Position numbers and translations under genes: made by a program. Of a stretch of 64,000 nucleotides of DNA, positions 1-64,000 are shown piece by piece; the first letter of the stretch is position 1; the number at the start of each line of letters is the position of its first letter. Source of the DNA: Lepidodermella squamata (taxonomy: Eukaryota; Animalia; Gastrotricha). Below the pieces are notes generated by a model, which saw only the letters and a program-made list of their open reading frames with translations, made no database searches and was not told where the DNA came from. The stretch spans positions 461,239 through 525,238 of the forward strand of contig JBLDXI010000073.1 in NCBI GenBank assembly GCA_047495785.1, written 5' to 3'.

Positions 1-3000
1 TACCACACGTAAGTTGCCTGGAACATGGTTATCTGAGTCCCTCGTATCTCTAATAATTTTCAGCGACCTGCTCACCAGCCTGTGCCAATGGAGTTTGCCA
101 GGCTGATAGGACATGCGACTGTACTGGAACTGGATACACAGGGACTCGATGTGAAAATGGCAAGCTTCTTAAAGTCCTTTTATAGAATAATGCTGAAATA
201 ATGCAATGCAGCCGTGTGCTCCCCTTCATGCGCAAACGGCGGAGTTTGCTCAAGACCGAGCACATGCTCCTGCGTTAACGGCTACACTGGGCCTACCTGC
301 TCTCTCTGTGAGTGTTTTTATTGTCAAAAATGCCTGATATTATGAGCAAATTCTTTGATAGCATCTTGCTCTCCCGCCTGCTTGAATGGTGGAACGTGCA
401 ATGGCAACAAATGCACATGTGCAGCTGGATGGGCGAGAAATGATTGCTCAATTCGTGAGTTTTCTTCTCAAACCGTCTTATCATAGTTGGACTCATTTTC
501 AAACCTTCCAACTTCTAATGTTATTGTGACCTACCTAGAACCTTGAATTTTGTCACTACAAGCTTAAATTTCCCATTTGAAAATCCATTGATCCCCTTGA
601 CGTTTTGCGATTTCTAGGCTAAAGAACTAATCATTTTTACTTCTCTTTCATGGAAATAACCTTCCGCTTAAACAAAAGTATTCACGTTCTTTGTGTTAAT
701 ATACCTGGGTTTATTATGGTGATATCTTTATCTCTCGTAAAAACGTGTATTTATGAAATGTGAAGCTACCTGCACGCCGGCCTGTCAAAATGGCGGCACC
801 TGCGTCGGCGGCAACGTGTGCAAATGCGCGAATGGCTACACAGGCTCAACGTGCTCGGATGGTATGGCAATAATAGACAGTAAATGTTGGCATCTTTTGT
901 TAATAATTTTCGCATGACGCAGCTGTGTGCACACCAACTTGCAAAAATGGTCGATGCACTGCGACAAATTTGTGCTCTTGCGATTCCGGATGGACTGGTC
1001 CAGATTGCTCAACTTGTAAAATGTTCCTAAATGTTCTCTTTAATCAATTTAACGTTCGTTTCGATATGAAGCTGCCTGTTCGTCGCCTTGCTTGAACGGA
1101 GGAGCGTGTACAGGAACGAACAAGTGCACTTGCGTTGGAGGATACACGGGTGCAACGTGTGCCGAATGTGACTCATCGTTATTACTGATTTAGCTGATAA
1201 ATCTTAACTATTCTAGATTCTTGCTCGCAAACGTGCAAAAATGGAGGTGTCTGTATACGTCCGAACACCTGTAGCTGTGGTGATCAATGGGCTGGCATTG
1301 ACTGTAGCATACGTAAGCTAAAACATTTTAATTCCACTTATCATAAATTACTAGCATTAGAACAGCTGTTAATGTTAATAACTGGATTTTTCTGTTCGAT
1401 CAGCATGTTATCTTTCTGGGCAAAGCTTCGTCCAGAAAAGGCTTCCTTTTTAGGGTTTTTCGCTTACTGTGATTCAGACTAATTAACAAATTCGCTCAAT
1501 TTAGATAGGTATTAATTATTAATTTAATTATTAACTTTAGCAAACTCCTAGTCGAGAGCGCGTAGAAATATACGAATTCCTCCCGCAGTCATCCCGCACA
1601 TCCCGCAGTTCATCATGTGGACGTCCACGTGTATTGCAGCGTGATAAAAATTTCTCTGCATTCTCCCATACAAAAAATAGTGTGCATATGTTAATGATTT
1701 TGCGAGAAGATGAATGCTTATGAATGCAGTTCAGGTTTAAAAGTGAAAATTGTAGGGCTGAACGCCTGAAACATACAGGCCTTGCATATCTAATTCTGCT
1801 TTTGCTCCTCCTGATCTAATTTTTGAAATGATGATGAAAATGATGATAAAATTAGGCCGGATCAGCCGGATCATCCAAGGGGGCGTCGTGACACTCCAGC
1901 TCCAACCACAGAAAGGCTTAACAACCACAGGGAGGACCCGTTGGTTCCTTTGGCTGGGTGCTAGAGAACACCTCAGCTTCCGGATCCTACTCCTATCGCA
2001 CTACAAGTAAGGTAGTTGCCTTGGACCTGCTGAAAATAGTTTTTCCTCAGATAAGATACATCTTACCTTCAAGTAGCCTGCGTGGACCTCATACGCGGAC
2101 CTCATACGGTCAAAATCAGGTGCCATGATTCGTCATTGAAGAAGAAATGCGGAAGTGTAATGTAATGTGGGAAAAAATCTCGACTACATCCTAAAAAAAC
2201 GAGTTGATACGGATTAGGATACGCTAAACAGCCAAATTCCAGGTCTGAGATGTAAAAACTTCTTTACATTCTTTCTCTATATTGCGAAACCATTGCAACA
2301 TCCAACATTGCTGAGTTAATTTACTTGTTGCTAATTTAGCCACGTGTACTCCAGCCTGTGCGAACGGCGGCATTTGCTCATACGTCAATCTTTGTACCTG
2401 CGTGAACAACTACTACGGATCGCGCTGCACGCAATGTGAGGCTAGCAATCTTTCGATACCATCTCATACCTATGTTGTTTCTCCAGTTTCCTGCGTTAAA
2501 ACTTGCCAGAATGGAGGAACCTGCACAGCCCCGAACACTTGTACCTGCGGTGCGGGCTGGAAAGGAGATGATTGCACTACTCGTAATGAGCTCATCCCGA
2601 AGCTTGGACCAATCGGCTAATTTTTCAATTATTTACAGCGATTTGCAATTCACCTTGCCAGAATGGAGGAACTTGCATCGCTCCGAACACGTGCAAGTGC
2701 GACGCTGGATGGCGAGGGGCTACTTGTTCTCAGAGTAAGGAGCATCTTCAAGGAAATGCAAAACTACAGACTGATTTTATATTTCAGCCAAGTACTATAT
2801 ATCCGCTAGCTCAACTAATTTCCGCGACGCTACGACAAATTGTGAGACATCAAGCAGCCGCGCTGCTGTGATTTACTCGCAAGGTGAGTGGGACAAGGCG
2901 AAGATCAGCTTGGGGTCAAACAGCAAAGTTTGGATTGCGCTATCGGCTGGATTCCGATGGATCTACGACAATTCGCCGGTTGGGTTTTCTGATTTATGGG

Positions 3001-3976
3001 GAAATGGCGAGCCGAGCGGTGACGGCAGTTGTAAGTACATAGCTCAGGGTTCGATCTTCGATCCCCGAGCTCCCAGGGATGGACAAAATTCTTTTGCTGT
3101 ATTTGCCAAAATGACGAGTCATTTAGGGTAATAACCGAGCGAAGCGAGAAAAGTTTGGAGATTTTCCACTAAAACACGCCTCAGAACCTTCTAAAATTAA
3201 CAAAACAGTGGGTTAAATTCTAATTTTGTTGTCTGGCCCAGCTGAGCCCCCCTGAAAGTCGCACACTGACATAGCTATCTAGATAGCGCTGCTAATCAAA
3301 ACTACTTGTGGATAATATCCCTGATATTAGGCTAACAATTATGTGATGGCTTTGTAATCGTTGCTTATCCCAGGATCATTCAAAAAGGCATTGTTGATTT
3401 GCTCTTGATGCTCTTGCAATTGCAGGCGTGGAAATTGCAGTTTATACAGGCATAACGCAAGGTTTAAACGACATATCGTGCTCAACGATTCGAAATTCAC
3501 TGTGCCAAGATCCAATCAATGTGAGGGCTTTCTTGTTAGTACAATTCCTCAATTGACAATTTTTATTTTCACAGGAAAATGACTTGGTGGTCGTCACGCC
3601 GGCTGGTATTTGGGATTTAGCCAGAGGTAAATGTGAGGCGGTAGGACGAAAATTGGCGGTATTGAAGACGAAAACACTTGTTGATGCAATGTTGAGTGCG
3701 TCGAAGTATGGCTGGGTCGCCGGTAAGCGTCCTGATGGCAATAATTTCTACTGGTCCACGGGCGTCGCTGTCACGCCGAGCAACGTCATTCCGCCGTGGG
3801 CTCCAGGCCAGCCGGAAATAAACTTGAACAAGCAATGTGAGTTGGCTTAATTTGTTTTGCATGTAATATGTTACTTCAAATGTACTGTTTTAGGTGTGAC
3901 GATGGGCACATCGGGTCAAATGACCGTGGAAAGGTGCAGCAACAGCAACTATGCACTTTGCGAATATACAAACTAA
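1..3976 (+). CDS. EGF-repeat + double C-type lectin protein, paralog A (5' end outside window; EGF exons 8-17, CTLD1, CTLD2)
   Basis: About 96-nt phase-1 exons each encoding C-x3-C-x-NGG-x-C-x4-C-x-C-x2-G-[WY]-x-G-x2-C between short introns. CTLD1 [14 protein letters not shown]...GEPSGDGSC...LND; CTLD2 [10 protein letters not shown]...WAPGQPE; ends CEYTN-TAA at 3974-3976. Confidence 0.88.
3050..3260 (-). repeat. Dispersed repeat fragment (other copies about 29700-29860 and 55570-55760)
   Basis: Shared core TTTTGAGAGGTT..GGAGC..GTTTTAGTGGAAAATCT, seen here as the reverse complement (agattttccactaaaacacg...). Boundaries approximate. Confidence 0.55.
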
Positions 3977-11033: not shown

Positions 11034-12403
11034 ATGACGCTGATACTATTCCTACTCTATGGTAATATCCTGAAATCACTTCATCAAATCATTCGGCTTG
11101 TTCCTCAAAGGTCTGTATGGGTCGAGCTTGGGATGTACGCCGAACGAATCTCAGAAGAAAAGCGCGGTAAATGATGGCGCTCGAATTGTAGCCCATCTCA
11201 TGAAACTATTTTCCTAACCAGCTTTGGTGCTCGAATGGGGGAACTTTCGACTCGGCAAGCGGTTCTTGCATTTGCCCGCCTGGGTATGGCGGTTCCCAGT
11301 GCGAAAAATGTACGCAACTATCTTACGGAGATTCAACGTGCTAGTTTTTCCCGTTCGTCTCATAGTTACGTGCCCCAATTGTCTCAACGGAGCAAGTTGC
11401 AGCGGCCCGAACAAATGTAGCTGCGCTTCAGGCTGGTCCGGCCAGAACTGCGAAACTTGTAATGGAAATTAATCACTTATTGCCGTTAATATTCATCAAT
11501 AACTAGCTAACTGCGTTGACCTACCCTGTCAAAATGGCGGAACTTGCGTCGGCGCTAACAAATGCAACTGCACAGATCGGTGGATGGGTCTAAACTGTGG
11601 CACCTGTAAGAACAGGGTTCTTCAAGGTTTAAAAGTGACTTTAATTAGTCTGATTCAGCTGCTTGCTCGAAGAACCCATGCAAAAACGGTGGGACGTGCA
11701 TTGGCTACAGCCTTTGTTCTTGCTCGACTGGCTACTCCGGTTCCGACTGCGGCAGTGGGTCATTTCAAAATTCGAAGAATGATTATCCTCCTTGTGTATT
11801 CAAGTTTTCTGCAATCCGCCCTGTGCAAATGGTGGAATATGCCGAGCCGGTAATACATGTAGCTGCCCTGTTGGCTGGGCAGGATCGGATTGTACGACGC
11901 GTTAGTGCTATACAGAAATGCTGTAATTGATCTCATGAAAAAATTGAATCGCTATTCCACAGCTTCGTGCAACCCTGCGTGTCAAAATGGCGGGTCATGT
12001 ACGAGCCAACTGACTTGCACTTGCCCTGATGGCTACACGGGCCTTACATGTGGAGTCTGTACGTCGAAATAATTGTTGCCTCCCTCTCGTGAATGCTAAC
12101 ATTTCCCTTCAGTTACCTGTTCTCAGACTTGTGCGAACGGCGGTAGATGCTCGGGGCCGAATACTTGCACGTGCGCCGATGGTTGGACTGGAAAGGATTG
12201 TACCACACGTATTTGCCTTCGATCATTGTGTTAGTTCCTCTCAGCCCGAATCAATTTCAGCCACATGCTCGCCGGCGTGTGCCAATGGCCTTCAGGCGAA
12301 TATTTTCCGCTATCCGCTACAAAGCTCCCAGATATTGTATACTATTTCAGTTATAGCGACAGTGTCGAAAGGCGAGAGTTTTTATTTTTCCTTTAAATTT
12401 TAA
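11034..12403 (+). pseudogene. Truncated duplicate of paralog C (signal peptide + 7 EGF + partial 8th, no CTLD)
   Basis: ATG 11034, MTLILFLLY/GLYGSSLGC. EGF8 is broken at the duplication junction and reads on as ANGLQANIFRYP...FKF-stop at 12403. Confidence 0.75.
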
Positions 12404-12905: not shown

Positions 12906-15900
12906 ATGACGCTGATACTATTCCTACTCTATGGTAATATCCTGAAATCACTTCATCAAATCATTCGGCTTGTTCCTCAAAGGTCTGTATGGGTCGAGCT
13001 TGGGATGTACGCCGAACGAATCTCAGAAGAAAAGCGCGGTAAATGATGGCGCTCGAATTGTAGCCCATCTCATGAAACTATTTTCCTAACCAGCTTTGGT
13101 GCTCGAATGGGGGAACTTTCGACTCGGCAAGCGGTTCTTGCATTTGCCCGCCTGGGTATGGCGGTTCCCAGTGCGAAAAATGTACGCAACTATCTTACGG
13201 AGATTCAACGTGCTAGTTTTTCCCGTTCGTCTCATAGTTACGTGCCCCAATTGTCTCAACGGAGCAAGTTGCAGCGGCCCGAACAAATGTAGCTGCGCTT
13301 CAGGCTGGTCCGGCCAGAACTGCGAAACTTGTAATGGAAATTAATCACTTATTGCCGTTAATATTCATCAATAACTAGCTAACTGCGTTGACCTACCCTG
13401 TCAAAATGGCGGAACTTGCGTCGGCGCTAACAAATGCAACTGCACAGATCGGTGGATGGGTCTAAACTGTGGCACCTGTAAGAACAGGGTTCTTCAAGGT
13501 TTAAAAGTGACTTTAATTAGTCTGATTCAGCTGCTTGCTCGAAGAACCCATGCAAAAACGGTGGGACGTGCATTGGCTACAGCCTTTGTTCTTGCTCGAC
13601 TGGCTACTCCGGTTCCGACTGCGGCAGTGGGTCATTTCAAAATTCGAAGAATGATTATCCTCCTTGTGTATTCAAGTTTTCTGCAATCCGCCCTGTGCAA
13701 ATGGTGGAATATGCCGAGCCGGTAATACATGTAGCTGCCCTGTTGGCTGGGCAGGATCGGATTGTACGACGCGTTAGTGCTATACAGAAATGCTGTAATT
13801 GATCTCATGAAAAAATTGAATCGCTATTCCACAGCTTCGTGCAACCCTGCGTGTCAAAATGGCGGGTCATGTACGAGCCAACTGACTTGCACTTGCCCTG
13901 ATGGCTACACGGGCCTTACATGTGGAGTCTGTACGTCGAAATAATTGTTGCCTCCCTCTCGTGAATGCTAACATTTCCCTTCAGTTACCTGTTCTCAGAC
14001 TTGTGCGAACGGCGGTAGATGCTCGGGGCCGAATACTTGCACGTGCGCCGATGGTTGGACTGGAAAGGATTGTACCACACGTATTTGCCTTCGATCATTG
14101 TGTTAGTTCCTCTCAGCCCGAATCAATTTCAGCCACATGCTCGCCGGCGTGTGCCAATGGCGTTTGCAAAGCTGATAAAACTTGCGACTGTACTGGAACT
14201 GGTTACACTGGAACTCGGTGTGAAACTGGTACGTTTAATCTATGCTTTGCGATCAAATCATCTTTAATTATATGGAAATTCCGGTGTAAACGATCATTTC
14301 CCCTTGTTTTTGCAGCCGTGTGCTCCCCTGCTTGCGTAAACGGCGGAGGTTGTTCGAGACCGAACACCTGCTCATGCATCAACGGTTACACTGGGCCTAC
14401 CTGTTCAATCTGTTTGTGATTTTGGTTGCCATTGAAATTTCAGGCTATATTAACTACTAATTCTACAGCATCTTGCTCGCCTGCTTGCTTGAATGGCGGA
14501 ACCTGCAACGGCAATAAGTGCACATGTGCCCCTGGTTGGACAGGAAATGATTGCTCTATTCGTGAGTCTTCTTTTCAAATATCCCAATATCCTAATAGCC
14601 TCCAGACATTTTTTAAAACATTTTGAAATATTACTCTGTTTTGAAAGCTTTACATCACAACAAATTTGCTTTGTTTCTTTTTATGCGAAATTTCCCATTC
14701 ATGCAACAAAAGCAAAGACCTCTCTTGGTCTTATACCGGGGTTCATTATGATAGCATTATCTCATGTAATAACGTGTATTCATTAATATTGCAGCTACTT
14801 GCACGCCGGCTTGTCAAAATGGCGGCACCTGCCTCGGTGGCAACGTATGCAAATGCTCGAATGGCTACACAGGCTCAACGTGCTCAGATGGTATTGCAAT
14901 AACAGACAAGTTGTTGGCAGCTTTTAATGATGATTTTCTCATGACGCAGCCGTGTGCACTCCAACGTGCAAAAATAATGGCCGCTGCACTGCGACAAATC
15001 TGTGCGCTTGCGACTCCGGATGGACTGGATCGGATTGCTCAACTTGTAAATCCTATATTCAATTCCTCTGATAAATTTAATATTTTCCAACTCCTGAAGC
15101 GGCTTGCTCATCGCCCTGCTTGAACGGAGGAGCTTGTTCAGGAACGAACAAGTGTACTTGCGTTAATGGATACACTGGGGCAACGTGTGCTGCATGTGAG
15201 TCATCGCTTCATCGTTATTGCCCGTCCATCTAATACCCATCCTTGTCACCAGATACGTGCTCCCAGACTTGCAAAAATGGAGGTGTCTGCATATCCCCAG
15301 ACAAGTGCAGCTGTGGTGATCAATGGACCGGAATCGACTGTAGCATTCGTAAGTTGAGATGATTATTTTTTAAATTCTGAGGATAAAATTATGGCTGCAA
15401 ATAATCAATTTTACTACAACTTTTCGCTGGAATATGCTTATCGAATATGCTGAATATAAAATATCATTGTCATTTCAGCCACGTGTACTCCAGCCTGTGC
15501 GAATGGCGGCATTTGCTCCTACGTCAACCTGTGTACCTGCGTGAACAACTACTACGGCTCGCGCTGCACGCAATGTGAGATTAGCAATAATTCGATTACA
15601 TCCATACAACATATGCTTTGTTCTTCAGTTTCCTGCATTAAAACTTGTCAGAATGGTGGCACCTGTACAGCCCCAAACACCTGCACTTGCGCTACTGGAT
15701 GGAAAGGAGATGACTGCACTACACGTAAGGAGCTCATTTCAAAGCTTGGGCCAATCAACAAACTTTTCAAACTTTTCCTAGCGATTTGTAATTCTCCGTG
15801 CCAGAATGGAGGAACTTGTATAGCTCCGAACACGTGCAAGTGCGACTCAGGATGGAGAGGGGCTACTTGCTCTCAGAGTAAGGAGTTTTATCAAGGGAAA

Positions 15901-22536: not shown

Positions 22537-30792
<8,256 letters not shown>

Positions 30793-54600: not shown

Positions 54601-55128
54601 CACCATGTATGTGGGAATCGGGCTTAACGATGAAGCTTGTTCCACGATTAATAAAGTACTTTGCCAAAGTTTAACCGATGTGAGCCCTTTCATTACCGCG
54701 ACTTATTCCCTTCTAACTTTCATCAAATAGGAAAATGACATTCAAAACTTCGCGCCCGATTCTAATTGGGCGAACGCAAAAAGCAATTGCGACGGAAGAG
54801 GACTCAGACTAGCAGTCCTGAAGACGCGAACAATCGTTGACTTGATGATTAGCCAAAGTAAAGCTGGATGGATCGCCGCGAAACGCCCCGATGGCAGTAA
54901 TTTCTACTGGTCTACAGGCGGGATTGTCTCGCCCAGCAACACCATTCCGCCATGGGCCTCAGGCCAGCCTGAAATAAGCGATAGCAAGCAATGTAATTTC
55001 CTGAAAAAAGGCGCAGTGTTTTAACTATATTTCATGTTGATTCAGGCGTTACGATGGACACGACTGGTAAAATGACGGTTGCAAGGTGCAACGACAACAA
55101 CGATGCGCTATGCGAGTATACCTCCTAA
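51608..55128 (+). CDS. Secreted EGF(5)-CTLD-CTLD protein, paralog G
   Basis: MNPFLIAI/GLASVGFSTGCSPSQQRSAL; 5 EGF exons at about 51951-52632. CTLD1 EPS...LND split by a 1.66-kb TE-filled intron; CTLD2 QPE; CEYTS-TAA at 55126-55128. Confidence 0.85.
53571..54208. mobile_element. hAT-like non-autonomous fragment (AACCG/CGGTT subterminal repeats)
   Basis: Clusters ccggttaaaccgcggttaaccg and aaccggcggttaaccgcggtt, ending gcatctcta. No TSD verified. Confidence 0.5.
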
Positions 55129-56517
55129 AGCGGAAATCAACAAGATGCATATTAGATTTGATGGTTGATTGGATAACTTTACAAATATTGTGGTGGTTGC
55201 GTGATAAATATTATCGACGCATTTGGAATCCTGTAAGGTATTGTTGATCAAAAATGAGAATATTATGAACATAATATGAAGTTATATATTTTTTTAAATA
55301 TATTTGATACTTTCTTATATCTTGCAGAGTCTTTTATTATTATTAATTATTATAAATAATCCAGCAACTTACCGATAATCCCACGTGTTCCAGTTTCTCA
55401 AACTGCTTGTATGATAAATTTCGTGAATAAATGAAGATGCTAGCATTATATATATATTGGGGAAATTAATCCTGAAAATCGTCTTCATTTTCGGCTGGTA
55501 TTACCCACGAATCACCTGATCTCGGTTCTTCGTTACAATATGCTGTCTTCATTTTCAGCGACATTCTGGAGGGGGACAGACCAAACACGAAAATAAGAAT
55601 TTAGCCCTCTGCTTCGTCAATTTTGAGAGGTTTTGGAGCTTGTTTTAGTGGAAAATCTTCGCTCGCTTTTCTGGTTGAAATCACTAGTTTCGACAAATAC
55701 AGCAACAAATGTTTTTCCATCCCTTGCAGCTCCAGGATCCAAGATCGCACCCTGTTTTCGGGTTAGAGAGAATCCTTATAAATAGAAGGCGAAGCCAAGA
55801 AATTCTAGATTTGATATTGGCTAACCTTCAGTTCCATTTAACTAGCAATTCTGGGGCCGAGCCTTCGGCCCGGCCATCCTATTTAGTCCACCTATGGAAA
55901 AATAAAGGAACCACAAAGAATACATATTTCTTGGAGTGAAATCAACTTATCTGAGTGGACACGGACTTCAGCAACTAATCAGCAATCAACTTTAGTATAT
56001 ATCATTAGATATAAACATAAACATGTATCGCTATGAAGGTAAACGCTGCAAATCAATGCCTAACCTCGTGGGTCAGTCAAGTTGAGTCTGTTCAGACTAA
56101 CTTGCATCTCTCACTTTTCAGGGATTGTTAAGACGTCTCCTATATTAACACTTTAACTGCCCAAATTACGGCAAAAGTACCGTTGCGGTCGTAACTAAGT
56201 ATCGGTATTTCGTAACGACACTAAGTTTCGTTATTTTCAACCGAAACATTTTGCCGTCAAATAGTTCCGTTAATTTATTTCGGCATTGTCGGCATTTAGT
56301 AACGGAACATGTTCAAAAAACAACTCGCTTTTACTTGCTATTACCAACGTTATCAGAAATTGGCTCGGAATTTTTGCCTTACTCTAAATGTCGTCACTTA
56401 CATAGGAAATAGTTCTATAATTCCGAGTTAGGAGCAACAGTTCTCAATAGATTACGCAACTACGGCGACAATTTCAATGGAGAATAGTTTTTGAATGATG
56501 TTGATTTTTAAATCGTT

Positions 56518-57653
56518 TCAATAGCTGCTGGGCTCACTTTTGACCCTTTTCCGAGTATTCACCGATGAGCGCGCAGCCGCTGCTGATCGTCGATGGTCAA
56601 GGGTGGCTTGGATGGCCGAATCAATCAGGTGATACAACTTGAACGATCCCTGATAACGAGCAGCAACCCGAGCAGCCACCGCAAGCCGCATTTCTTCCGG
56701 GCACTGGGCCACAGAAACAAAGTTAGTGCCACTAAATTATCACATTTGTAGAAATTACAAGATTTTTCTTCTTTTATAAAAGTAACCTTTCTTTGCAAAT
56801 CCATATAAGCAGCGCTTTTGCATAATCGGCGATTTTGTCATGCGTACTAAATAGTAGCTCCTCCGTCTTGGCGTCAATTTCTACTTCCTTGCCATAAATC
56901 ACGCCGAGTTTTATAGGTGGCTTGGGATTTTTCGGCTCGGGCTTCGGAGCTAGTGCAATAAGCGACGAATCACCACTTGAAATCGAAATAGTTGGAGACG
57001 CGGGCGCCGGATGCTTTCGAGCGATTGCCTCAGTGTGACGGACCTCATACCAGACAATTTTATTGACGTGCCATTGCATCTTTTCGACCTCATCGCTCAG
57101 AATCGTGATGATTTGGAACTGCGCTTGGAACTGACCAGGGCATATTTCCGCAACCGATTTCGCAAGTGCCAGTTCGATTCGCTCTGCGCCATTAGCACTA
57201 AACAGGATGTAATCTGGGACTGGAGCTTGCTCGAACTCAGCTCGCGTGCCAGCACTGGATAGATTTGCGGACGATTTTGCTCGACTCGTAGAGGGCTCAT
57301 CGACTTCGAGTAAATCCGGATCGATTTGAAAGTCGGGGAAATCAGAAGCTGGTGGCGTAGCTCTCCTGCCTGCAGGTGCTTTCTGCGCAGTAGTTCGTTT
57401 ACTTGAATTTTTGGTAGGAGTGTCTTGACGTGTCTTCTTCCCAGGAGTTTCTTTCCGCGTTGCTTTAGCAGAAGCTTCCTTTGCCTGTCGATTTTTTGTT
57501 TGACCTTTCGGCTCCGATTGCCTTGTTGCCGCCGCTTGGGCTCGCGATCGAGTTTTCGGGAGAGATTTGCGGGAACTGCCAATGGCACCATTTTCTTCTT
57601 CCTCGGCGTCGTCCGCGTCCTCGTTCTCGTCGTCATCGTCGTCGTCGTCGTCG

Positions 57654-57685
<32 letters not shown>

Positions 57686-58199
57686 AGTCTCGTCCTCATC
57701 GGCCTCGGACACGCTTTCCATTTCCCCGGCTGGTATTGTCTTCCCGTATATGTCCTCTGCTGAAACTGACTACGATAAATGGAAATAAATTAGCCATGGG
57801 CTATGGTTGCAGATCAAGATAGCTTACCTTGTTGGACTCGTCGCCGCTTTGGCCGCGGTTTTCGGACTCCATCGCTGCGCAGCAACGCCGGAAATCTTCG
57901 TTGTGAGAACCGTCATCTTTCAAGATCGATGGTCTTTCCTCCGTTAGGCGAACCAATCTAGTAGCGGCAAAGATGGTCTTGTCGAGGAATCCGTAGACAA
58001 CAATCAATTTTCTTTTCTCAAAGTGATGGAAATTAGATCGATAAAATTGGTCGGGAATATCTTTGCTGTTTTTGAACGTAGCTGCGGGGTAATAAGAGCG
58101 TGTATGCAAGGTCCAGTTGGCGAAGCCTATTTTAGCAAACTTCGTTGGATCGGGGTGATAGTGATCCAAAGACACACTTTTGTCTTTGTGAAGTTTCAT
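56518..58199 (-). CDS. piggyBac cargo gene, 522 aa: PWWP-like N-terminus, D/E tract, K/R/S/T-rich linker, BEN-like C-terminus; exons 58199-57828, 57769-56787, 56731-56518
   Basis: Two GT-AG introns (58 and 55 nt) join three ORFs exactly in frame (372 + 983 + 214 nt). Domain labels are by pattern resemblance only. The mirror copy 60646-62326 (+) has a 1-nt frameshift. Confidence 0.78.
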
Positions 58200-58389
58200 T
58201 TCAAAAAATAAATCTTATTCAAGCAATAAATTTCCGAAGAAATGGTTTCTCATGCTCATTTACTGAAACGCAGCCTCAATTTATTGGAGCGCTGAGTTTT
58301 TCTCATCTCTAATTGATATCAATTCTACTCTCAACTCCCATTCATATAAGTTTTAAATTGGGCAGATCTTTTTGTTTGTTATCTTTCTA

Positions 58390-59149
58390 ATGGCTCCGGT
58401 TTGGCGTAATATAGGCCAGTCATTTCGGCCACGGCGATTTCCCTTCCGACCGACGCCACAATCTCATGTAATACCCAACCCTTTCCAGCTCTTCTTGAAA
58501 ATGGTCGGCGCTAATAGACTGTTTCGGGATATTGCGTCGTGGACGAATGCTCATGCATCCGCAAATCGTTTCATATTCATGAGACCCACTTCGAGTAAGC
58601 CATCTCTCTATTCTTTAAATTTATCAAAATCATGATCATCTGGGAATAGGAAGGGCTCGGTGGCGACCAACTAGCGCTCATGAAATTGCTGGATTTTTCG
58701 GTATCATCATGGATATGGGTTTCGAACATGGTTCGACAATCGAAGACTACTGGTCTACTCGGCGTCGTCGCCCTCGATTCATGTCGAGAAATCGATTTCA
58801 ACTTCTACAGTCAACTGTCCGATTTTCTGAACCCAGGAGGGCGTTGATGAACGCGGGCGTAAATCGCCTAGCTTCAATTCAAGATTTGATTAATCGATTG
58901 AATCGGAGATTTCTTATGCTACGATCTGCCCCGCGTTGCTTGGTAATTGATGAATCTCTAATGAATTATCGAGGAAACGTTGTTTTTCGGCAATTCAACA
59001 AGTCAAAGCGCCACAAGTATGGAATCAAAATTTACAGGCTTTGCGATCCAACGGGCTACTGTTATCGTTTCGAAATCCACAAGAAAATGTCAAGAGCAAG
59101 AAAAATTAGCCTGGCTGAGCATTTTGGACACGCAACGCTGGGTTTTTGA
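58390..59149 (+). pseudogene. Truncated mirror copy of the piggyBac transposase (cut at fold point 59076)
   Basis: Identical to the minus-strand copy up to YCYRFEI, then unrelated sequence; intron 58595-58649. Confidence 0.8.
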
Positions 59150-59165
59150 ATAAATGGTATTGATA

Positions 59166-60456
59166 CTAGGGCCGAGTTAGCCCTTCGATGATCTGCTTTC
59201 TCACATCTCTGATGGAAATATCCATTGTACCTGGCATTTTTCGCAAAAGACACCACGTGTTGACCACAGCGCTGTTCAGCAGCAGTTCTACGGCAACTTT
59301 GAATTCCCACCGTCGCGACTTCCGCAATGCCGAGTGGTAAGAAGCCATCTGGTCTTGTTTATCGATGCCGCATTTGCAGAGATTGTAGTCAATCAACGCT
59401 TTTGGAAGTAATCTGGGATGCCCTGAACGCTTCGAATGGTCCAAGGATTTTTTATTTTGGTGGAAGTTTGAGAGAAACATGACTTCCCGTCGATCAAAGA
59501 ACCGAAAAATCAAAGTTCCGAGATCATCAGTCGCAGCAGCCAGATCGCCGCGTTCGATGCGTCGCTGCAAGAGTTCCTGAGGGTTGCCGTTTCTGTTTTT
59601 ACGCAAGGTCCCAACAAGATGTGTGCTTCGTTTCCATAGCTTTCGGGAAAGCAAATAGGACGTAAAATAGTTGTCAGTGAATAAGATATGACCCCGGTCG
59701 AGGTGGTGACGCATAAGGCGCATGCAAAGCCTGGCTGTTACATTTCGCTTATTCGATTTTCCAGTGTATATTTCGAAACGATAACAGTAGCCCGTTGGAT
59801 CGCAAAGCCTGTAAATTTTGATTCCATACTTGTGGCGCTTTGACTTGTTGAATTGCCGAAAAACAACGTTTCCTCGATAATTCATTAGAGATTCATCAAT
59901 TACCAAGCAACGCGGGGCAGATCGTAGCATAAGAAATCTCCGATTCAATCGATTAATCAAATCTTGAATTGAAGCTAGGCGATTTACGCCCGCGTTCATC
60001 AACGCCCTCCTGGGTTCAGAAAATCGGACAGTTGACTGTAGAAGTTGAAATCGATTTCTCGACATGAATCGAGGGCGACGACGCCGAGTAGACCAGTAGT
60101 CTTCGATTGTCGAACCATGTTCGAAACCCATATCCATGATGATACCGAAAAATCCAGCAATTTCATGAGCGCTAGTTGGTCGCCACCGAGCCCTTCCTAT
60201 TCCCAGATGATCATGATTTTGATAAATTTAAAGAATAGAGAGATGGCTTACTCGAAGTGGGTCTCATGAATATGAAACGATTTGCGGATGCATGAGCATT
60301 CGTCCACGACGCAATATCCCGAAACAGTCTATTAGCGCCGACCATTTTCAAGAAGAGCTGGAAAGGGTTGGGTATTACATGAGATTGTGGCGTCGGTCGG
60401 AAGGGAAATCGCCGTGGCCGAAATGACTGGCCTATATTACGCCAAACCGGAGCCAT
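59166..60456 (-). CDS. piggyBac (PGBD / DDE_Tnp_1_7-type) transposase, about 411 aa; exons 60456-60252 and 60196-59166
   Basis: MSRNRF, VIDESL, KRHKYGIKIY, FTDNYFTS, VGTLRKNR, YN..K.GIDKQDQ: intact DDD triad. A 55-nt intron joins FQLF..IASWTN to WRPTSAHEIAGFFGIIMDMG. Confidence 0.93.
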
Positions 60457-61158
60457 TAGAAAGATAACAAACAAAAAGATCTGCCCAATTTAAAACTTAT
60501 ATGAATGGGAGTTGAGAGTAGAATTGATATCAATTAGAGATGAGAAAAACTCAGCGCTCCAATAAATTGAGGCTGCGTTTCAGTAAATGAGCATGAGAAA
60601 CCATTTCTTCGGAAATTTATTGCTTGAATAAGATTTATTTTTGAAATGAAACTTCACAAAGACAAAAGTGTGTCTTTGGATCACTATCACCCCGATCCAA
60701 CGAAGTTTGCTAAAATAGGCTTCGCCAACTGGACCTTGCATACACGCTCTTATTACCCCGCAGCTACGTTCAAAAACAGCAAAGATATTCCCGACCAATT
60801 TTATCGATCTAATTTCCATCACTTTGAGAAAAGAAAATTGATTGTTGTCTACGGATTCCTCGACAAGACCATCTTTGCCGCTACTAGATTGGTTCGCCTA
60901 ACGGAGGAAAGACCATCGATCTTGAAAGATGACGGTTCTCACAACGAAGATTTCCGGCGTTGCTGCGCAGCGATGGAGTCCGAAACCGCGGCCAAAGCGG
61001 CGACGAGTCCAACAAGGTAAGCTATCTTGATCTGCAACCATAGCCCATGGCTAATTTATTTCCATTTATCGTAGTCAGTTTCAGCAGAGGACATATACGG
61101 GAAGACAATACCAGCCGGGGAAATGGAAAGCGTGTCCGAGGCCGATGAGGACGAGACT

Positions 61159-61190
<32 letters not shown>

Positions 61191-63983
61191 CGACGACGAC
61201 GACGACGATGACGACGAGAACGAGGACGCGGACGACGCCGAGGAAGAAGAAAATGGTGCCATTGGCAGTTCCCGCAAATCTCTCCCGAAAACTCGATCGC
61301 GAGCCCAAGCGGCGGCAACAAGGCAATCGGAGCCGAAAGGTCAAACAAAAAATCGACAGGCAAAGGAAGCTTCTGCTAAAGCAACGCGGAAAGAAACTCC
61401 TGGGAAGAAGACACGTCAAGACACTCCTACCAAAAATTCAAGTAAACGAACTACTGCGCAGAAAGCACCTGCAGGCAGGAGAGCTACGCCACCAGCTTCT
61501 GATTTCCCCGACTTTCAAATCGATCCGGATTTACTCGAAGTCGATGAGCCCTCTACGAGTCGAGCAAAATCGTCCGCAAATCTATCCAGTGCTGGCACGC
61601 GAGCTGAGTTCGAGCAAGCTCCAGTCCCAGATTACATCCTGTTTAGTGCTAATGGCGCAGAGCGAATCGAACTGGCACTTGCGAAATCGGTTGCGGAAAT
61701 ATGCCCTGGTCAGTTCCAAGCGCAGTTCCAAATCATCACGATTCTGAGCGATGAGGTCGAAAAGATGCAATGGCACGTCAATAAAATTGTCTGGTATGAG
61801 GTCCGTCACACTGAGGCAATCGCTCGAAAGCATCCGGCGCCCGCGTCTCCAACTATTTCGATTTCAAGTGGTGATTCGTCGCTTATTGCACTAGCTCCGA
61901 AGCCCGAGCCGAAAAATCCCAAGCCACCTATAAAACTCGGCGTGATTTATGGCAAGGAAGTAGAAATTGACGCCAAGACGGAGGAGCTACTATTTAGTAC
62001 GCATGACAAAATCGCCGATTATGCAAAAGCGCTGCTTATATGGATTTGCAAAGAAAGGTTACTTTTATAAAAGAAGAAAAATCTTGTAATTTCTACAAAT
62101 GTGATAATTTAGTGGCACTAACTTTGTTTCTGTGGCCCAGTGCCCGGAAGAAATGCGGCTTGCGGTGGCTGCTCGGGTTGCTGCTCGTTATCAGGGATCG
62201 TTCAAGTTGTATCACCTGATTGATTCGGCCATCCAAGCCACCCTTGACCATCGACGATCAGCAGCGGCTGCGCGCTCATCGGTGAATACTCGGAAAAGGG
62301 TCAAAAGTGAGCCCAGCAGCTATTGAAACGATTTAAAAATCAACATCATTCAAAAACTATTCTCCATTGAAATTGTCGCCGTAGTTGCGTAATCTATTGA
62401 GAACTGTTGCTCCTAACTCGGAATTATAGAACTATTTCCTATGTAAGTGACGACATTTAGAGTAAGGCAAAAATTCCGAGCCAATTTCTGATAACGTTGG
62501 TAATAGCAAGTAAAAGCGAGTTGTTTTTTGAACATGTTCCGTTACTAAATGCCGACAATGCCGAAATAAATTAACGGAACTATTTGACGGCAAAATGTTT
62601 CGGTTGAAAATAACGAAACTTAGTGTCGTTACGAAATACCGATACTTAGTTACGACCGCAACGGTACTTTTGCCGTAATTTGGGCAGTTAAAGTGTTAAT
62701 ATAGGAGACGTCTTAACAATCCCTGAAAAGTGAGAGATGCAAGTTAGTCTGAACAGACTCACTTACTGACCACGAGATGTGTTAGGCATTGATTTGCAGC
62801 GTTTACCTTCATAGCGATACATGTTTATGTTTATATCTAATGATATATACTAAAGTTGATTGCTGATTAGTTGCTGAAGTCCGTGTCCACTCAGATAAGT
62901 TGATTTCACTCCAAGAAATATGTATTCTTTGTGGTTCCTTTATTTTTCCATAGGTGGACTAAATAGGATGGCCGGGCCGAAGGCTCGGCCCCAGAATTGC
63001 TAGTTAAATGGAACTGAAGGTTAGCCAATATCAAATCTAGAATTTCTTGGCTTCGCCTTCTATTTATAAGGATTCTCTCTAACCCGAAAACAGGGTGCGA
63101 TCTTGGATCCTGGAGCTGCAAGGGATGGAAAAACATTTGTTGCTGTATTTGTCGAAACTAGTGATTTCAACCAGAAAAGCGAGCGAAGATTTTCCACTAA
63201 AACAAGCTCCAAAACCTCTCAAAATTGACGAAGCAGAGGGCTAAATTCTTATTTTCGTGTTTGGTCTGTCCCCCTCCAGAATGTCGCTGAAAATGAAGAC
63301 AGCATATTGTAACGAAGAACCGAGATCAGGTGATTCGTGGGTAATACCAGCCGAAAATGAAGACGATTTTCAGGATTAATTTCCCCAATATATATATAAT
63401 GCTAGCATCTTCATTTATTCACGAAATTTTATCATACAAGCAGTTTGAGAAACTGGAACACGTGGGATTATCGGTAAGTTGCTGGATTATTTATAATAAT
63501 TAATAATAATAAAAGACTCTGCAAGATATAAGAAAGTATCAAATATATTAAAAAAATATATAACTTCATATTATGTTCATAATATTCTCATTTTTGATCA
63601 ACAATACCTTACAGGATTCCAAATGCGTCGATAATATTTATCACGCAACCACCACAATATTTGTAAAGTTATCCAATCAACCATCAAATCTAATATGCAT
63701 CTTGTTGATTTCCGCTTTAGGAGGTATACTCGCATAGCGCATCGTTGTTGTCGTTGCACCTTGCAACCGTCATTTTACCAGTCGTGTCCATCGTAACGCC
63801 TGAATCAACATGAAATATAGTTAAAACACTGCGCCTTTTTTCAGGAAATTACATTGCTTGCTATCGCTTATTCAGGCTGGCCTGAGGCCCATGGCGGAAT
63901 GGTGTTGCTGGGCGAGACAATCCCGCCTGTAGACCAGTAGAAATTACTGCCATCGGGGCGTTTCGCGGCGATCCATCCAGCTC

Positions 63984-64000
63984 ACTCTCACGAGATGTGT
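63984..64000 (-). other. Probable untrimmed PacBio barcode (bc1003 + T overhang)
   Basis: Last 17 nt ACTCTCACGAGATGTGT = reverse complement of ACACATCTCGTGAGAGT, which I recall as bc1003. Palindrome identity stops immediately before it. Confidence 0.8.

What the first reader, a model, noticed from the sequence alone, without database searches (positions are those of the whole stretch)
56149..60456. Two-gene piggyBac: transposase divergently paired with a PWWP-like / acidic / BEN-like chromatin protein
Seen: inside the TTAA-CACTTTAA end lies an intact three-exon 522-aa gene, head-to-head (190 bp) with an intron-containing DDD transposase. The cargo has a D/E run of about 35 residues, a basic linker and a C-terminal NLS-like RKRVK. 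Inference from patterns: the N-terminus (IGFANWTLHTRSYYPAA...IVVYGFLD...FRRCCAAME) resembles PWWP, and the C-terminus (YAKALLIWI...MRLAVAARV...IDSAIQATLDHRR) resembles BEN. Established: canonical piggyBacs encode one ORF with an acidic disordered N-terminus and a C-terminal Cys-rich domain; neither is evident in frame here. Hypothesis: a bipartite piggyBac whose accessory protein reads chromatin to target insertion or counter silencing.
Basis: partly seen in the sequence, partly recalled or inferred. Interest (0 to 1): 0.82.

Follow-up and report, generated by a model that had tools for sequence, protein, structure and literature searches.

The report
Two-gene piggyBac inside a fold-back palindrome
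This is one copy of a multi-copy, roughly 3.7-kb piggyBac jumping gene whose short transposase has no zinc-finger tail and which always carries a second gene with no known relatives. At this locus the sequence is folded back on itself, probably through an assembly error, and the proposed PWWP and BEN domains could not be confirmed.

Summary
TTAA (56145-56148) is followed by a terminal repeat from 56149. An intact 3-exon, 522-aa gene (58199->56518, minus strand) lies 190 bp head-to-head with a spliced piggyBac transposase. That transposase matches DDE_Tnp_1_7 at 2e-57, has all three DDD motifs and is only 411 aa. No Cys-rich domain occurs anywhere in the element.

The span 56149-60456 is not one element. 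The window holds a 2 x 4.2-kb palindrome (54862-59076 / 59770-63982) with 0 substitutions and 9 small indels. It mirrors 1.3 kb of host flank, and its junction lies inside the transposase at an 8-nt microhomology. I judge it about 65% likely to be a fold-back artefact.

Contigs of a public run of the same organism give the true unit: the terminal repeat 56149-56243 is joined to 59069. The element is therefore TIR-transposase-cargo-TIR, about 3.72 kb and multi-copy. This copy carries at least 17 private changes. A second organism keeps the same head-to-head pair.

The cargo is an orphan. It has no relatives in an exhaustive search, and its only domain signal is a sub-threshold Tudor hit. PWWP and BEN are unsupported exon by exon and untested on the joined protein.

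The scan already reported this family elsewhere in this genome (s1-430864).

Best reading: a two-gene piggyBac without a Cys-rich domain, whose partner protein probably replaces the lost C-terminal functions. That last step is inferred.

The parts
54862..59076 (.). Left arm of the palindrome. It holds the host flank, the element end, the intact cargo gene and the 5' 40% of the transposase.
   Evidence: Gapped alignment to the reverse complement of 59770-63982 gives 0 mismatches and 9 indel events. The repeat finder I1-I7 cover the same arms. The outer boundary, 54862, falls inside a copy of the window's own repeated exon family D9 (54767-55007).
56145..56148 (.). TTAA next to the element end (piggyBac target sequence).
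   Evidence: Read directly. The terminal pattern starts at 56149.
56149..56243 (+). Terminal repeat module of about 95 nt (CACTTTAACTGCCC...). Its inner part holds a 26-nt tandem pair at 56194-56245.
   Evidence: An X1 contig joins 56243 directly to 59069 on the same strand. Three different continuations follow 56243/56244: the window itself, X1 record 7 and an X3 loose end. Word depth here is several-fold above the element interior.
56244..56517 (-). Cargo-side subterminal region / cargo 3' UTR, with short inverted and direct CGG/CCG-containing motifs.
56518..56731 (-). Cargo exon 3 (70 aa plus stop; ...MRLAVAARV...IDSAIQATLDHRR...RKRVK...).
56787..57769 (-). Cargo exon 2 (327 codons plus 2 nt): acidic run, basic linker, helical region, Pro-rich linker, and the start of the C-terminal domain.
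57828..58199 (-). Cargo exon 1 (124 aa), a beta-rich N-terminal domain with a sub-threshold Tudor_3 match at residues 26-47.
58200..58389 (.). 190-bp divergent intergenic region, presumably a shared promoter.
   Evidence: It is bridged by X1 record 6 (57714-58587), X3 record 22 and X2 record 13.
58390..58594 (+). Transposase exon 1, left-arm copy (68 codons plus 1 nt).
58650..59076 (+). Transposase exon 2, left-arm copy, cut off after ...GYCYRFEI.
59069..59076 (.). Fold-back junction. The 8-nt microhomology TTCGAAAT is shared by the mid-transposase and the sequence just inside the other terminal repeat.
   Evidence: The X1 joint is 56243|59069.
59077..59769 (-). Single-copy spacer of the palindrome. 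It holds the transposase 3' half and 97 nt of 3' UTR, and is continuous with the right arm.
59166..60196 (-). Complete transposase exon 2 (342 codons plus stop): DDE_Tnp_1_7, DDD intact, no Cys-rich domain.
60252..60456 (-). Transposase exon 1, right-arm copy. The intron is 60197-60251.
   Evidence: Mirror coordinates.
60646..62326 (+). Right-arm copy of the cargo gene. A one-base shorter homopolymer near 60985 shifts the frame of exon 1.
62601..62699 (-). Right-arm copy of the terminal repeat (62601-62695) and its TTAA (62696-62699).
59770..63982 (.). Right arm of the palindrome. It ends 18 nt before the end of the window.

Best explanation
The window holds one insertion of a multi-copy piggyBac-family DNA transposon of about 3.72 kb.

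Structure of the element (shown):
- It has terminal repeats of about 95 nt and sits next to TTAA.
- Between the repeats are two divergently transcribed, spliced genes separated by 190 bp.
- One gene is a 411-aa transposase with an intact DDD catalytic core but no N-terminal acidic region and no C-terminal Cys-rich domain.
- The other is a 522-aa orphan protein: a beta-rich N-terminal domain, an acidic run, a basic linker, a helical region, a C-terminal domain and a basic tail.
- Shown: the two genes and the terminal repeat form one repeated unit in the source organism, and the same head-to-head arrangement occurs in a second organism.

Mechanism (inferred, about 0.35):
- In the model piggyBac the Cys-rich domain is essential and binds the transposon ends. 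The nuclear import signal lies in the same C-terminal part.
- This lineage has lost that part, so the partner protein may supply end recognition and/or nuclear import in trans. The Myb-like second protein of PIF/Harbinger elements does this.

The locus (inferred, about 0.65):
- The assembled locus is not natural. The sequence runs through the element to mid-transposase, switches strand at an 8-nt microhomology and reads back out through the same element and the same host flank.
- The two arms differ only by small, mostly homopolymer, indels.
- This is most likely a fold-back chimera fixed in the assembly rather than a biological inverted duplication.
For: Transposase identity:
- Pfam DDE_Tnp_1_7 at 2.2e-57 covers profile positions 50-349 of 349.
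- piggyBat 9c0f matches at 2e-34 and T. ni 6x67 at 3e-19. All three catalytic Asp motifs align.

No Cys-rich domain:
- Only 28 residues follow the catalytic domain.
- Only 97 nt separate the stop codon from the terminal repeat.
- No Cys-pair motif occurs in any frame.
- The only close database relative, P0001 (67% identity), also ends about 16 residues after the domain.

Gene models.

One mobile unit:
- X1 contigs cover 56209-56553, 56608-56774, 56778-57218, 57246-57441, 57714-58587, 59278-60184 and 59069-59307.
- All have word depth 250-356, against about 61-68 for locus-specific flank contigs.
- The last contig is joined to 56243, the inner end of the terminal repeat.
- At 17 sites X1's assembled form differs from the window, and 14 of these differences recur in X2, X3 or X4. 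This copy is therefore a diverged member of a family.
- Organism B contigs bridge cargo exon 1 to the spacer (58101-58311) and the spacer to transposase exon 1 (58275-58419).

Fold-back:
- The arms show 0 substitutions and 9 indel events over 4.2 kb.
- The arms include host flank and end inside a host repeated exon.
- The junction has a microhomology.
- The right arm carries a homopolymer frameshift where X1 agrees with the left arm.

Essential role of the Cys-rich domain in model piggyBac: PMC5861402, abstract seen.
Against: - No RNA evidence exists for either gene or for the introns. X4 is only a guessed RNA run and showed no splice joints.
- The second end and a TTAA duplication are not visible in the window.
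- The tool itself warns that contig word depth is not a copy number. X1 may be the sample the genome was assembled from.
- The cargo has no relatives. Conservation across old branches, and hence selection, was not shown here.
- This copy's private changes in the cargo (5 nonsynonymous, 3 synonymous) look neutral.
- Because the Cys-rich domain is essential in the model element, this transposase could simply be inactive.
- No contig in X1 bridges the fold-back junction. Contigs drop rare variants, however, so this neither proves the artefact nor excludes a real palindrome.
Confidence: 0.7

Rival explanations
1. The second gene is a passenger. It is a captured or newly arisen ORF that rides in the element but plays no part in transposition. 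It might, for example, serve the element against host silencing, or do nothing.
For: The cargo has no recognisable DNA-binding or transposition-related domain. It has no relatives anywhere. The private changes in this copy are mostly nonsynonymous. Earlier notes of this scan describe several other piggyBac elements with unrelated cargo genes in the same genome (unchecked).
Against: The transposase has lost a domain that is essential in the model element (PMC5861402), so something must compensate if the family moves. The pair shares a compact 190-bp divergent spacer that is retained in a second organism. The ORF is intact over 522 codons.
Confidence: 0.3
2. The palindrome is biological. A real fold-back inverted duplication arose in the genome by template switching at the TTCGAAAT microhomology, and it left two dead half-elements.
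For: The spacer-plus-microhomology architecture is exactly what replication-based fold-back inversions produce. The arms are long, and the structure survived into the assembly.
Against: The arms have zero substitutions and differ only by small, mostly homopolymer, indels, which is the error pattern of long reads. The worst cluster of differences and the frameshift sit in the right arm, which ends 18 nt before the window end. No junction-bridging contig was laid in X1, though this is weak evidence.
Confidence: 0.33
3. The family is non-autonomous. The transposase without a Cys-rich domain is inactive, and the copies were moved in trans by another, complete piggyBac transposase. Alternatively, the missing zinc-finger function is supplied by the stand-alone Cys-rich-domain genes noted elsewhere in this genome.
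For: The Cys-rich domain is essential for cleavage and joining in T. ni piggyBac (PMC5861402). Earlier scan notes report many other piggyBac elements and stand-alone piggyBac zinc-finger genes in this genome (unchecked).
Against: The DDD core and both ORFs are intact in a diverged copy. A 67%-identical relative in another sample has the same C-terminal truncation and is still open. That argues the short form is a maintained state and not a recent defect.
Confidence: 0.15
4. The cargo is an ordinary single-copy host gene that happens to lie next to a transposase.
For: Only one element end is visible in the window, and the cargo is intact.
Against: Cargo contigs in X1 have the same high word depth as the transposase contigs. 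They are contiguous with the terminal repeat on one side and with the transposase on the other, and they carry a consensus that differs from this copy.
Confidence: 0.04

Closest known systems
Canonical piggyBac / piggyBat transposons (T. ni piggyBac, PDB 6x67; piggyBat, PDB 9c0f)
   Same: Same superfamily. It has the DDE_Tnp_1_7 catalytic domain with the DDD motifs, TTAA at the end and terminal inverted repeats.
   Different: The canonical elements have one ORF of about 580-600 aa with a disordered acidic N-terminus and a C-terminal Cys-rich domain that binds the ends and is essential (PMC5861402). Here the transposase is 411 aa, lacks both regions and is paired with a second gene. The nearest relatives that keep the Cys-rich domain are 39% identical or less.
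PIF/Harbinger two-gene DNA transposons (transposase plus Myb-like protein; from my own knowledge)
   Same: It works like this on the proposed reading. The element encodes a DDE transposase and a separate protein, and that protein would bring the transposase to the nucleus and to the subterminal repeats.
   Different: The transposase superfamily is unrelated. No Myb/SANT or any other recognisable DNA-binding domain is found in the cargo here. The analogy is functional and untested.
P0001, a 382-aa ORF on Logan contig SRR19603261_2844188 (L001)
   Same: It is 67% identical to the transposase over 98% of exon 2, has the same exon 1 / intron layout and the same short C-terminus without a Cys-rich domain.
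   Different: The contig is only 1457 nt long, so neighbours, ends and any cargo gene cannot be seen.
The same family at another place in this genome (scan note s1-430864)
   Same: The length agrees with the 3722 nt that I derive here.
   Different: That copy is described as a plain element. The copy here is embedded in a palindrome and shows only one kind of end. I could not read that note's sequence, so the agreement is not an independent test.

Membership tests
piggyBac superfamily transposon | Transposase with the DDE_Tnp_1_7 (PF13843) catalytic domain | tested here: met
   E=2.2e-57, 195 bits against a cutoff of 22.4, profile positions 50-349 of 349.
piggyBac superfamily transposon | Catalytic DDD triad | tested here: met
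   VIDES, FTDNY and GIDKQD align with LDEG, MDNY and GVDRAD of piggyBat 9c0f.
piggyBac superfamily transposon | TTAA target-site duplication flanking both ends | tested here: inconclusive
   TTAA abuts the one end that is visible (56145-56148). The other end is not in the window. The right-arm TTAA is only the mirror image of the same site.
piggyBac superfamily transposon | Terminal inverted repeats | tested here: met
   X1 contig record 7 places the sequence 56167-56243, on the same strand, directly before 59069. This means it lies in inverted orientation at the transposase-side end. The outermost 18 nt of that end were not aligned.
piggyBac superfamily transposon | C-terminal Cys-rich (cross-brace zinc finger) domain, PF13842 | tested here: not met
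   No Pfam hit. Only 28 residues follow the catalytic domain. No Cys-pair motif occurs in any ORF of the element. Membership of the superfamily stands on the catalytic domain, so this is a variant that lacks a usual accessory domain.
PWWP domain (PF00855) / Royal family | Profile match to PWWP or a related Tudor/chromo-type barrel | tested here: not met
   No PWWP hit at E<=10. The only signal is Tudor_3 at E=0.015, 15.6 bits against a cutoff of 25.8, over 22 residues.
PWWP domain (PF00855) / Royal family | Five-stranded beta-barrel fold followed by helices | tested here: inconclusive
   The single-sequence AlphaFold model has pLDDT 45. Its predicted elements are H18-26, four strands (E29-35, E52-59, E64-71, E79-84) and H100-117. 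Foldseek found no match with E below 0.1.
BEN domain (PF10523) | Profile match to BEN | tested here: not met
No hit for the exon 2 tail or for exon 3, taken separately, at E<=10.
BEN domain (PF10523) | All-alpha BEN fold | not testable with these tools
   The candidate domain is split by intron 2. The exon 2 model (pLDDT 56) shows only a hairpin plus one helix of it. The Foldseek hits are meaningless.
Two-component DNA transposon (Harbinger-like logic) | Second protein required for transposition and binding the ends | not testable with these tools
   This needs a transposition assay and DNA-binding tests.

The most novel reading that the evidence does not exclude
A piggyBac lineage has replaced its built-in Cys-rich end-binding and nuclear-import tail with a separately encoded, lineage-specific partner protein. 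That would make it the first two-component piggyBac, mechanistically parallel to PIF/Harbinger. The partner's N-terminal Tudor-like barrel could additionally tether the complex to chromatin.
Probability: 0.3. Interest if true: 0.8.

Novelty: new variant of a known kind. Interest (0 to 1): 0.55.

Why it matters
piggyBac is a major genome-engineering tool, and its Cys-rich domain is regarded as indispensable for recognising the transposon ends. A natural, multi-copy piggyBac that lacks this domain and always carries a second gene would have two consequences. It would show that end recognition can be handed to a separate protein. It would also offer a small 411-aa catalytic core with an exchangeable targeting partner.

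There is also a practical lesson for this genome. The near-perfect 4.2-kb palindrome that includes host flank is probably an assembly fold-back. Similar structures elsewhere in this assembly should not be read as biology without support from raw reads.

Tried and rejected
Searches for relatives and domains of the cargo, all negative:
- Word-index protein search with cargo exon 2 (residues 120-315) and with exon 1: no relatives.
- Exhaustive HMMER search of the 162-aa structured part of exon 2 against 1.84 billion representatives: four hits, all translated tandem-repeat DNA, rejected as spurious.
- Two JGI metagenome scans, one with the cargo piece and one with the transposase alignment A1: nothing.
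- Exact-product look-ups for the 315-aa cargo ORF and the 323-aa transposase ORF: not on record. This copy has private substitutions in every ORF.
- Pfam at E<=10, exon by exon: only Tudor_3 at 0.015.
- PDB sequence searches of the three cargo pieces: chance hits only.
- ESM Atlas feature search: recognition below the useful level, with generic helical-repeat clusters.
- Single-sequence AlphaFold of exon 1 and of the exon 2 C-terminal part: pLDDT 45 and 56. Foldseek against PDB gave no match with E below 0.1. I place no weight on these.
- Cargo against transposase by BLASTP: unrelated.

Other negative checks:
- Rfam on 55000-64000: nothing.
- Terminal-repeat pattern elsewhere in the window, looking for related miniature elements: only the two mirror copies.
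- Literature searches for a two-ORF or BEN-associated piggyBac: nothing relevant.

Ideas rejected:
- The junction as a product of piggyBac hairpin chemistry. It lies mid-gene, not at an element tip.
- The last 18 nt of the window as a Tn5/Nextera or SMRTbell adapter. This was compared from memory only and does not match.

Full report
**What is in the sequence.**

The ORF map immediately showed that every ORF between about 55.1 and 59.1 kb recurs, on the opposite strand, between 59.2 and 63.8 kb. The repeat finder reports inverted arms at 100% complementarity from 54862 to 59081 and from 59765 to 63982. A gapped alignment gives arms 54862-59076 and 59770-63982 with 0 mismatches and 9 indel events. 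Most of these are single bases in homopolymers. There is also one cluster of five indels at 56065-56082 / 62762-62780.

The arms contain more than the transposon. They also hold 1.29 kb of flanking DNA, and their outer boundary falls inside a copy of one of the window's own repeated exon families (D9, 54767-55007). The right arm stops 18 nt before the window ends.

**Gene models.**

The intact cargo gene is on the minus strand of the left arm.
- Its exons are 58199-57828, 57769-56787 and 56731-56518. That makes 522 codons plus stop.
- Its introns are 58 nt (GTAAGC...TCGTAG) and 55 nt (GTTACT...ATTTAG), in phases 0 and 2.
- The right-arm copy has a homopolymer one base shorter in exon 1 and is frameshifted.

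The transposase starts 190 bp away, at 58390 on the plus strand.
- It has a 55-nt intron at 58595-58649.
- In the left arm its exon 2 stops making sense after ...GYCYRFEI, at 59076.
- The complete gene is read on the minus strand from the right arm through the single-copy spacer: exon 1 at 60456-60252, exon 2 at 60196-59166, 411 aa in total.

**The transposase.**

- Pfam DDE_Tnp_1_7 matches at 2.2e-57 and covers profile positions 50-349 of 349.
- Against solved structures it aligns with piggyBat (9c0f, residues 143-459 of 578, 2e-34) and with T. ni piggyBac (6x67, residues 166-485 of 594).
- All three catalytic Asp motifs are conserved: VIDES, FTDNY and GIDKQD.
- Only 28 residues follow the domain.
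- No Cys-pair motif occurs in any ORF of 25 aa or more in the element, on either strand.
- The N-terminus has about 25 residues before the domain begins and is not acidic.
- Database relatives are 39% identical or less and are insect PGBD4-like proteins, some with the Cys-rich domain PF13842. The exception is P0001, at 67% identity, from a 1.46-kb Logan contig. It has the same short C-terminus.

**The real element, from public reads.**

One run (X1, organism A) holds 73% of the sampled words of 55400-60200. Its contigs tile the element at 99% identity or more (table 8):
- 56209-56553: subterminal region into cargo exon 3
- 56608-56774
- 56778-57218
- 57246-57441
- 57714-58587: cargo exons 2 and 1, the spacer and transposase exon 1
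- 59278-60184
- 59069-59307

The last contig continues, on the same strand, into 56243->56167. In the common form of the element, the sequence just beyond the transposase 3' UTR is therefore the inverted copy of the cargo-side end. The unit is thus 56149-56243 followed by 59069-62695, about 3722 nt, with terminal repeats of roughly 95 nt. Only 97 nt lie between the transposase stop codon and the repeat, which leaves no room for a Cys-rich exon.

Three different sequences follow 56243/56244: the window's cargo side, X1's transposase side and a third in an X3 contig. This marks the position as the inner edge of a shared terminal module.

Word depths are 250-356 for the internal contigs and 1300-3300 inside the terminal module. 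Locus-specific flank contigs have depths of about 61-68. The tool warns that contig depth is not a copy number, so I use this only qualitatively.

A stronger argument comes from the differences. At 17 listed sites X1's assembled form differs from the window. Of these, 14 recur in runs of organisms B and C, so they are private changes of this copy against a family consensus. In the cargo these changes are 5 nonsynonymous and 3 synonymous. That is what neutral decay of an inserted copy looks like.

Organism B (X2, X3) holds pieces of both genes at about 92-99% identity. These include contigs that bridge cargo exon 1 to the spacer (58101-58311) and the spacer to transposase exon 1 (58275-58419). 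Organism C (X4, possibly RNA) holds pieces of both genes but shows no splice joints.

The cargo is therefore not a single-copy host gene. It travels with the transposase.

**The palindrome.**

The junction lies in 59069-59076. There, TTCGAAAT is shared by the mid-transposase sequence (CGTTTCGAAATATAC) and by the sequence just inside the other terminal repeat (CCGTTCGAAATCCAC). Inverted arms, a 693-nt spacer and a microhomology are the signature of a template-switch fold-back. That can happen in vivo, or in vitro through amplification or library chimeras and fold-back long reads.

I favour an artefact at about 65%, for these reasons:
- The arms have no substitutions, only long-read-type indels.
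- The damaged versions (the frameshift and the indel cluster) sit in the right arm, while X1 agrees with the left arm.
- The arms include unique flank that is cut mid-exon.
- The structure ends 18 nt from the window end.

No contig bridging the junction was laid in X1. The 67.2 depth in the bin 58942-59102 is fully accounted for by record 7. X1's contigs also lack this copy's private letters, so the absence of a bridging contig carries little weight.

Either way the sequence content is genuine, and only the topology is in doubt. On the artefact reading, the true locus is a complete element inserted at the TTAA at 56145-56148, and its far flank is missing from the assembly.

**The cargo protein.**

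No tool supports PWWP or BEN.
- Pfam at E<=10 finds only Tudor_3 at E=0.015 (15.6 bits, cutoff 25.8). The match covers residues 26-47 of exon 1 (FANWTLHTRSYYPAATFKNSKD). This is a hint of a Royal-family barrel, not a demonstration.
- Word-index searches, an exhaustive HMMER search, metagenome scans, PDB sequence searches and the ESM Atlas found no relatives.
- Without an alignment, AlphaFold gave pLDDT 45 for exon 1, with a short helix, four strands and a C-terminal helix. It gave pLDDT 56 for the exon 2 C-terminal part, with two long helices, a disordered Pro-rich linker, and a hairpin plus helix. Foldseek returned nothing usable.
- The BEN-like stretch is split by intron 2.

**How it most likely works.**

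Shown: a compact unit of terminal repeat, transposase without a Cys-rich domain, 190-bp divergent spacer, orphan gene and terminal repeat. It is repeated in the source organism and present in at least one other organism.

Established elsewhere: the Cys-rich domain of T. ni piggyBac binds a motif in the ends and is essential for cleavage, joining and transposition (PMC5861402). From my own knowledge, the nuclear targeting signal lies in the same C-terminal region.

Inferred: the lineage lost this tail and remained multi-copy, and a 67%-identical relative shows the same truncation with an open frame. The missing functions are therefore probably supplied in trans. The obvious candidate is the co-transcribed partner, which has a basic NLS-like tail and two or three folded modules. 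This is the logic of PIF/Harbinger elements. I give it about 0.35.

The main alternatives are that the gene is a passenger, or that the family is moved by other piggyBac proteins. The latter could include the stand-alone zinc-finger genes that earlier scan notes report in this genome (unchecked).

**Relation to earlier scan notes.**

The scan found this family before on other DNA of the same genome. That is s1-430864, a 3765-letter element whose follow-up called it a real two-gene piggyBac without a zinc finger. My independent derivation of a 3.72-kb unit and of the co-mobility agrees with it. I could not test its claim of three old branches that keep the second gene. The only older branch I reached (P0001) sits on a contig too short to show a neighbour.

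**Verdict.**

The features are real, but the locus was misread because the palindrome was missed. The bipartite element holds, while the PWWP/BEN chromatin reader is not shown. In kind, this is a new variant of a known family. Interest is moderate to high for transposon biology. It is tempered by the orphan status of the cargo, the lack of expression or functional data, and the likely assembly artefact at this particular locus.

Noticed in passing
window 55590-55760: A very high-copy short repeat lies in the flank. X1 word depth reaches about 11,000, there are many contigs with different joints, and the repeat is also present in organisms B and C. It is probably a SINE/MITE-type element and is unrelated to the piggyBac.
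   Followed up: no
window 63983-64000: The 18 nt after the right arm (CACTCTCACGAGATGTGT) resemble 62760-62782 of the same arm, sharing the 12-mer CACGAGATGTGT. At that site the right arm carries a 4-nt insertion (ACAT in left-arm orientation; ATGT on the + strand) relative to the left arm. This may be the start of a further repeated or noisy stretch. It is unexplained because the window ends there.
   Followed up: partly
window 11485-12223 and 13357-14095: Direct repeats that are 100% identical, 1872 nt apart, lie inside the EGF-like repeat gene region (families D2, D5, D10, D15). This may be a very recent tandem duplication or another assembly duplication.
   Followed up: no
window 25828-28389: Arrays of 148-149-nt units (family D3) sit among Cys-rich EGF-like coding repeats (family D4: CxNGGxC...). 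The host locus is a large, internally repeated EGF-type gene cluster.
   Followed up: no
L001 1-1457 (Logan SRR19603261_2844188): A 67%-identical piggyBac transposase without a Cys-rich domain, with the same exon 1 / intron layout, occurs in an unrelated public sample. It is the only close relative in 5.8 billion proteins.
   Followed up: partly
window 56065-56082: X1 carries a variant here with a 10-nt insertion (TGAGTCTGAA) and two substitutions. It lies at the same spot where the two palindrome arms differ by five indels. The site is a short TGAGTCTG-type repeat that seems unstable or hard to sequence.
   Followed up: no
window 55755 / 56145: One X1 contig of single-copy-like depth (65) joins 55755 directly to the TTAA at 56145, skipping 389 nt, with only 25 nt on one side. 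It could be a deletion allele or a cross-match of the high-copy repeat. This was not resolved.
   Followed up: partly
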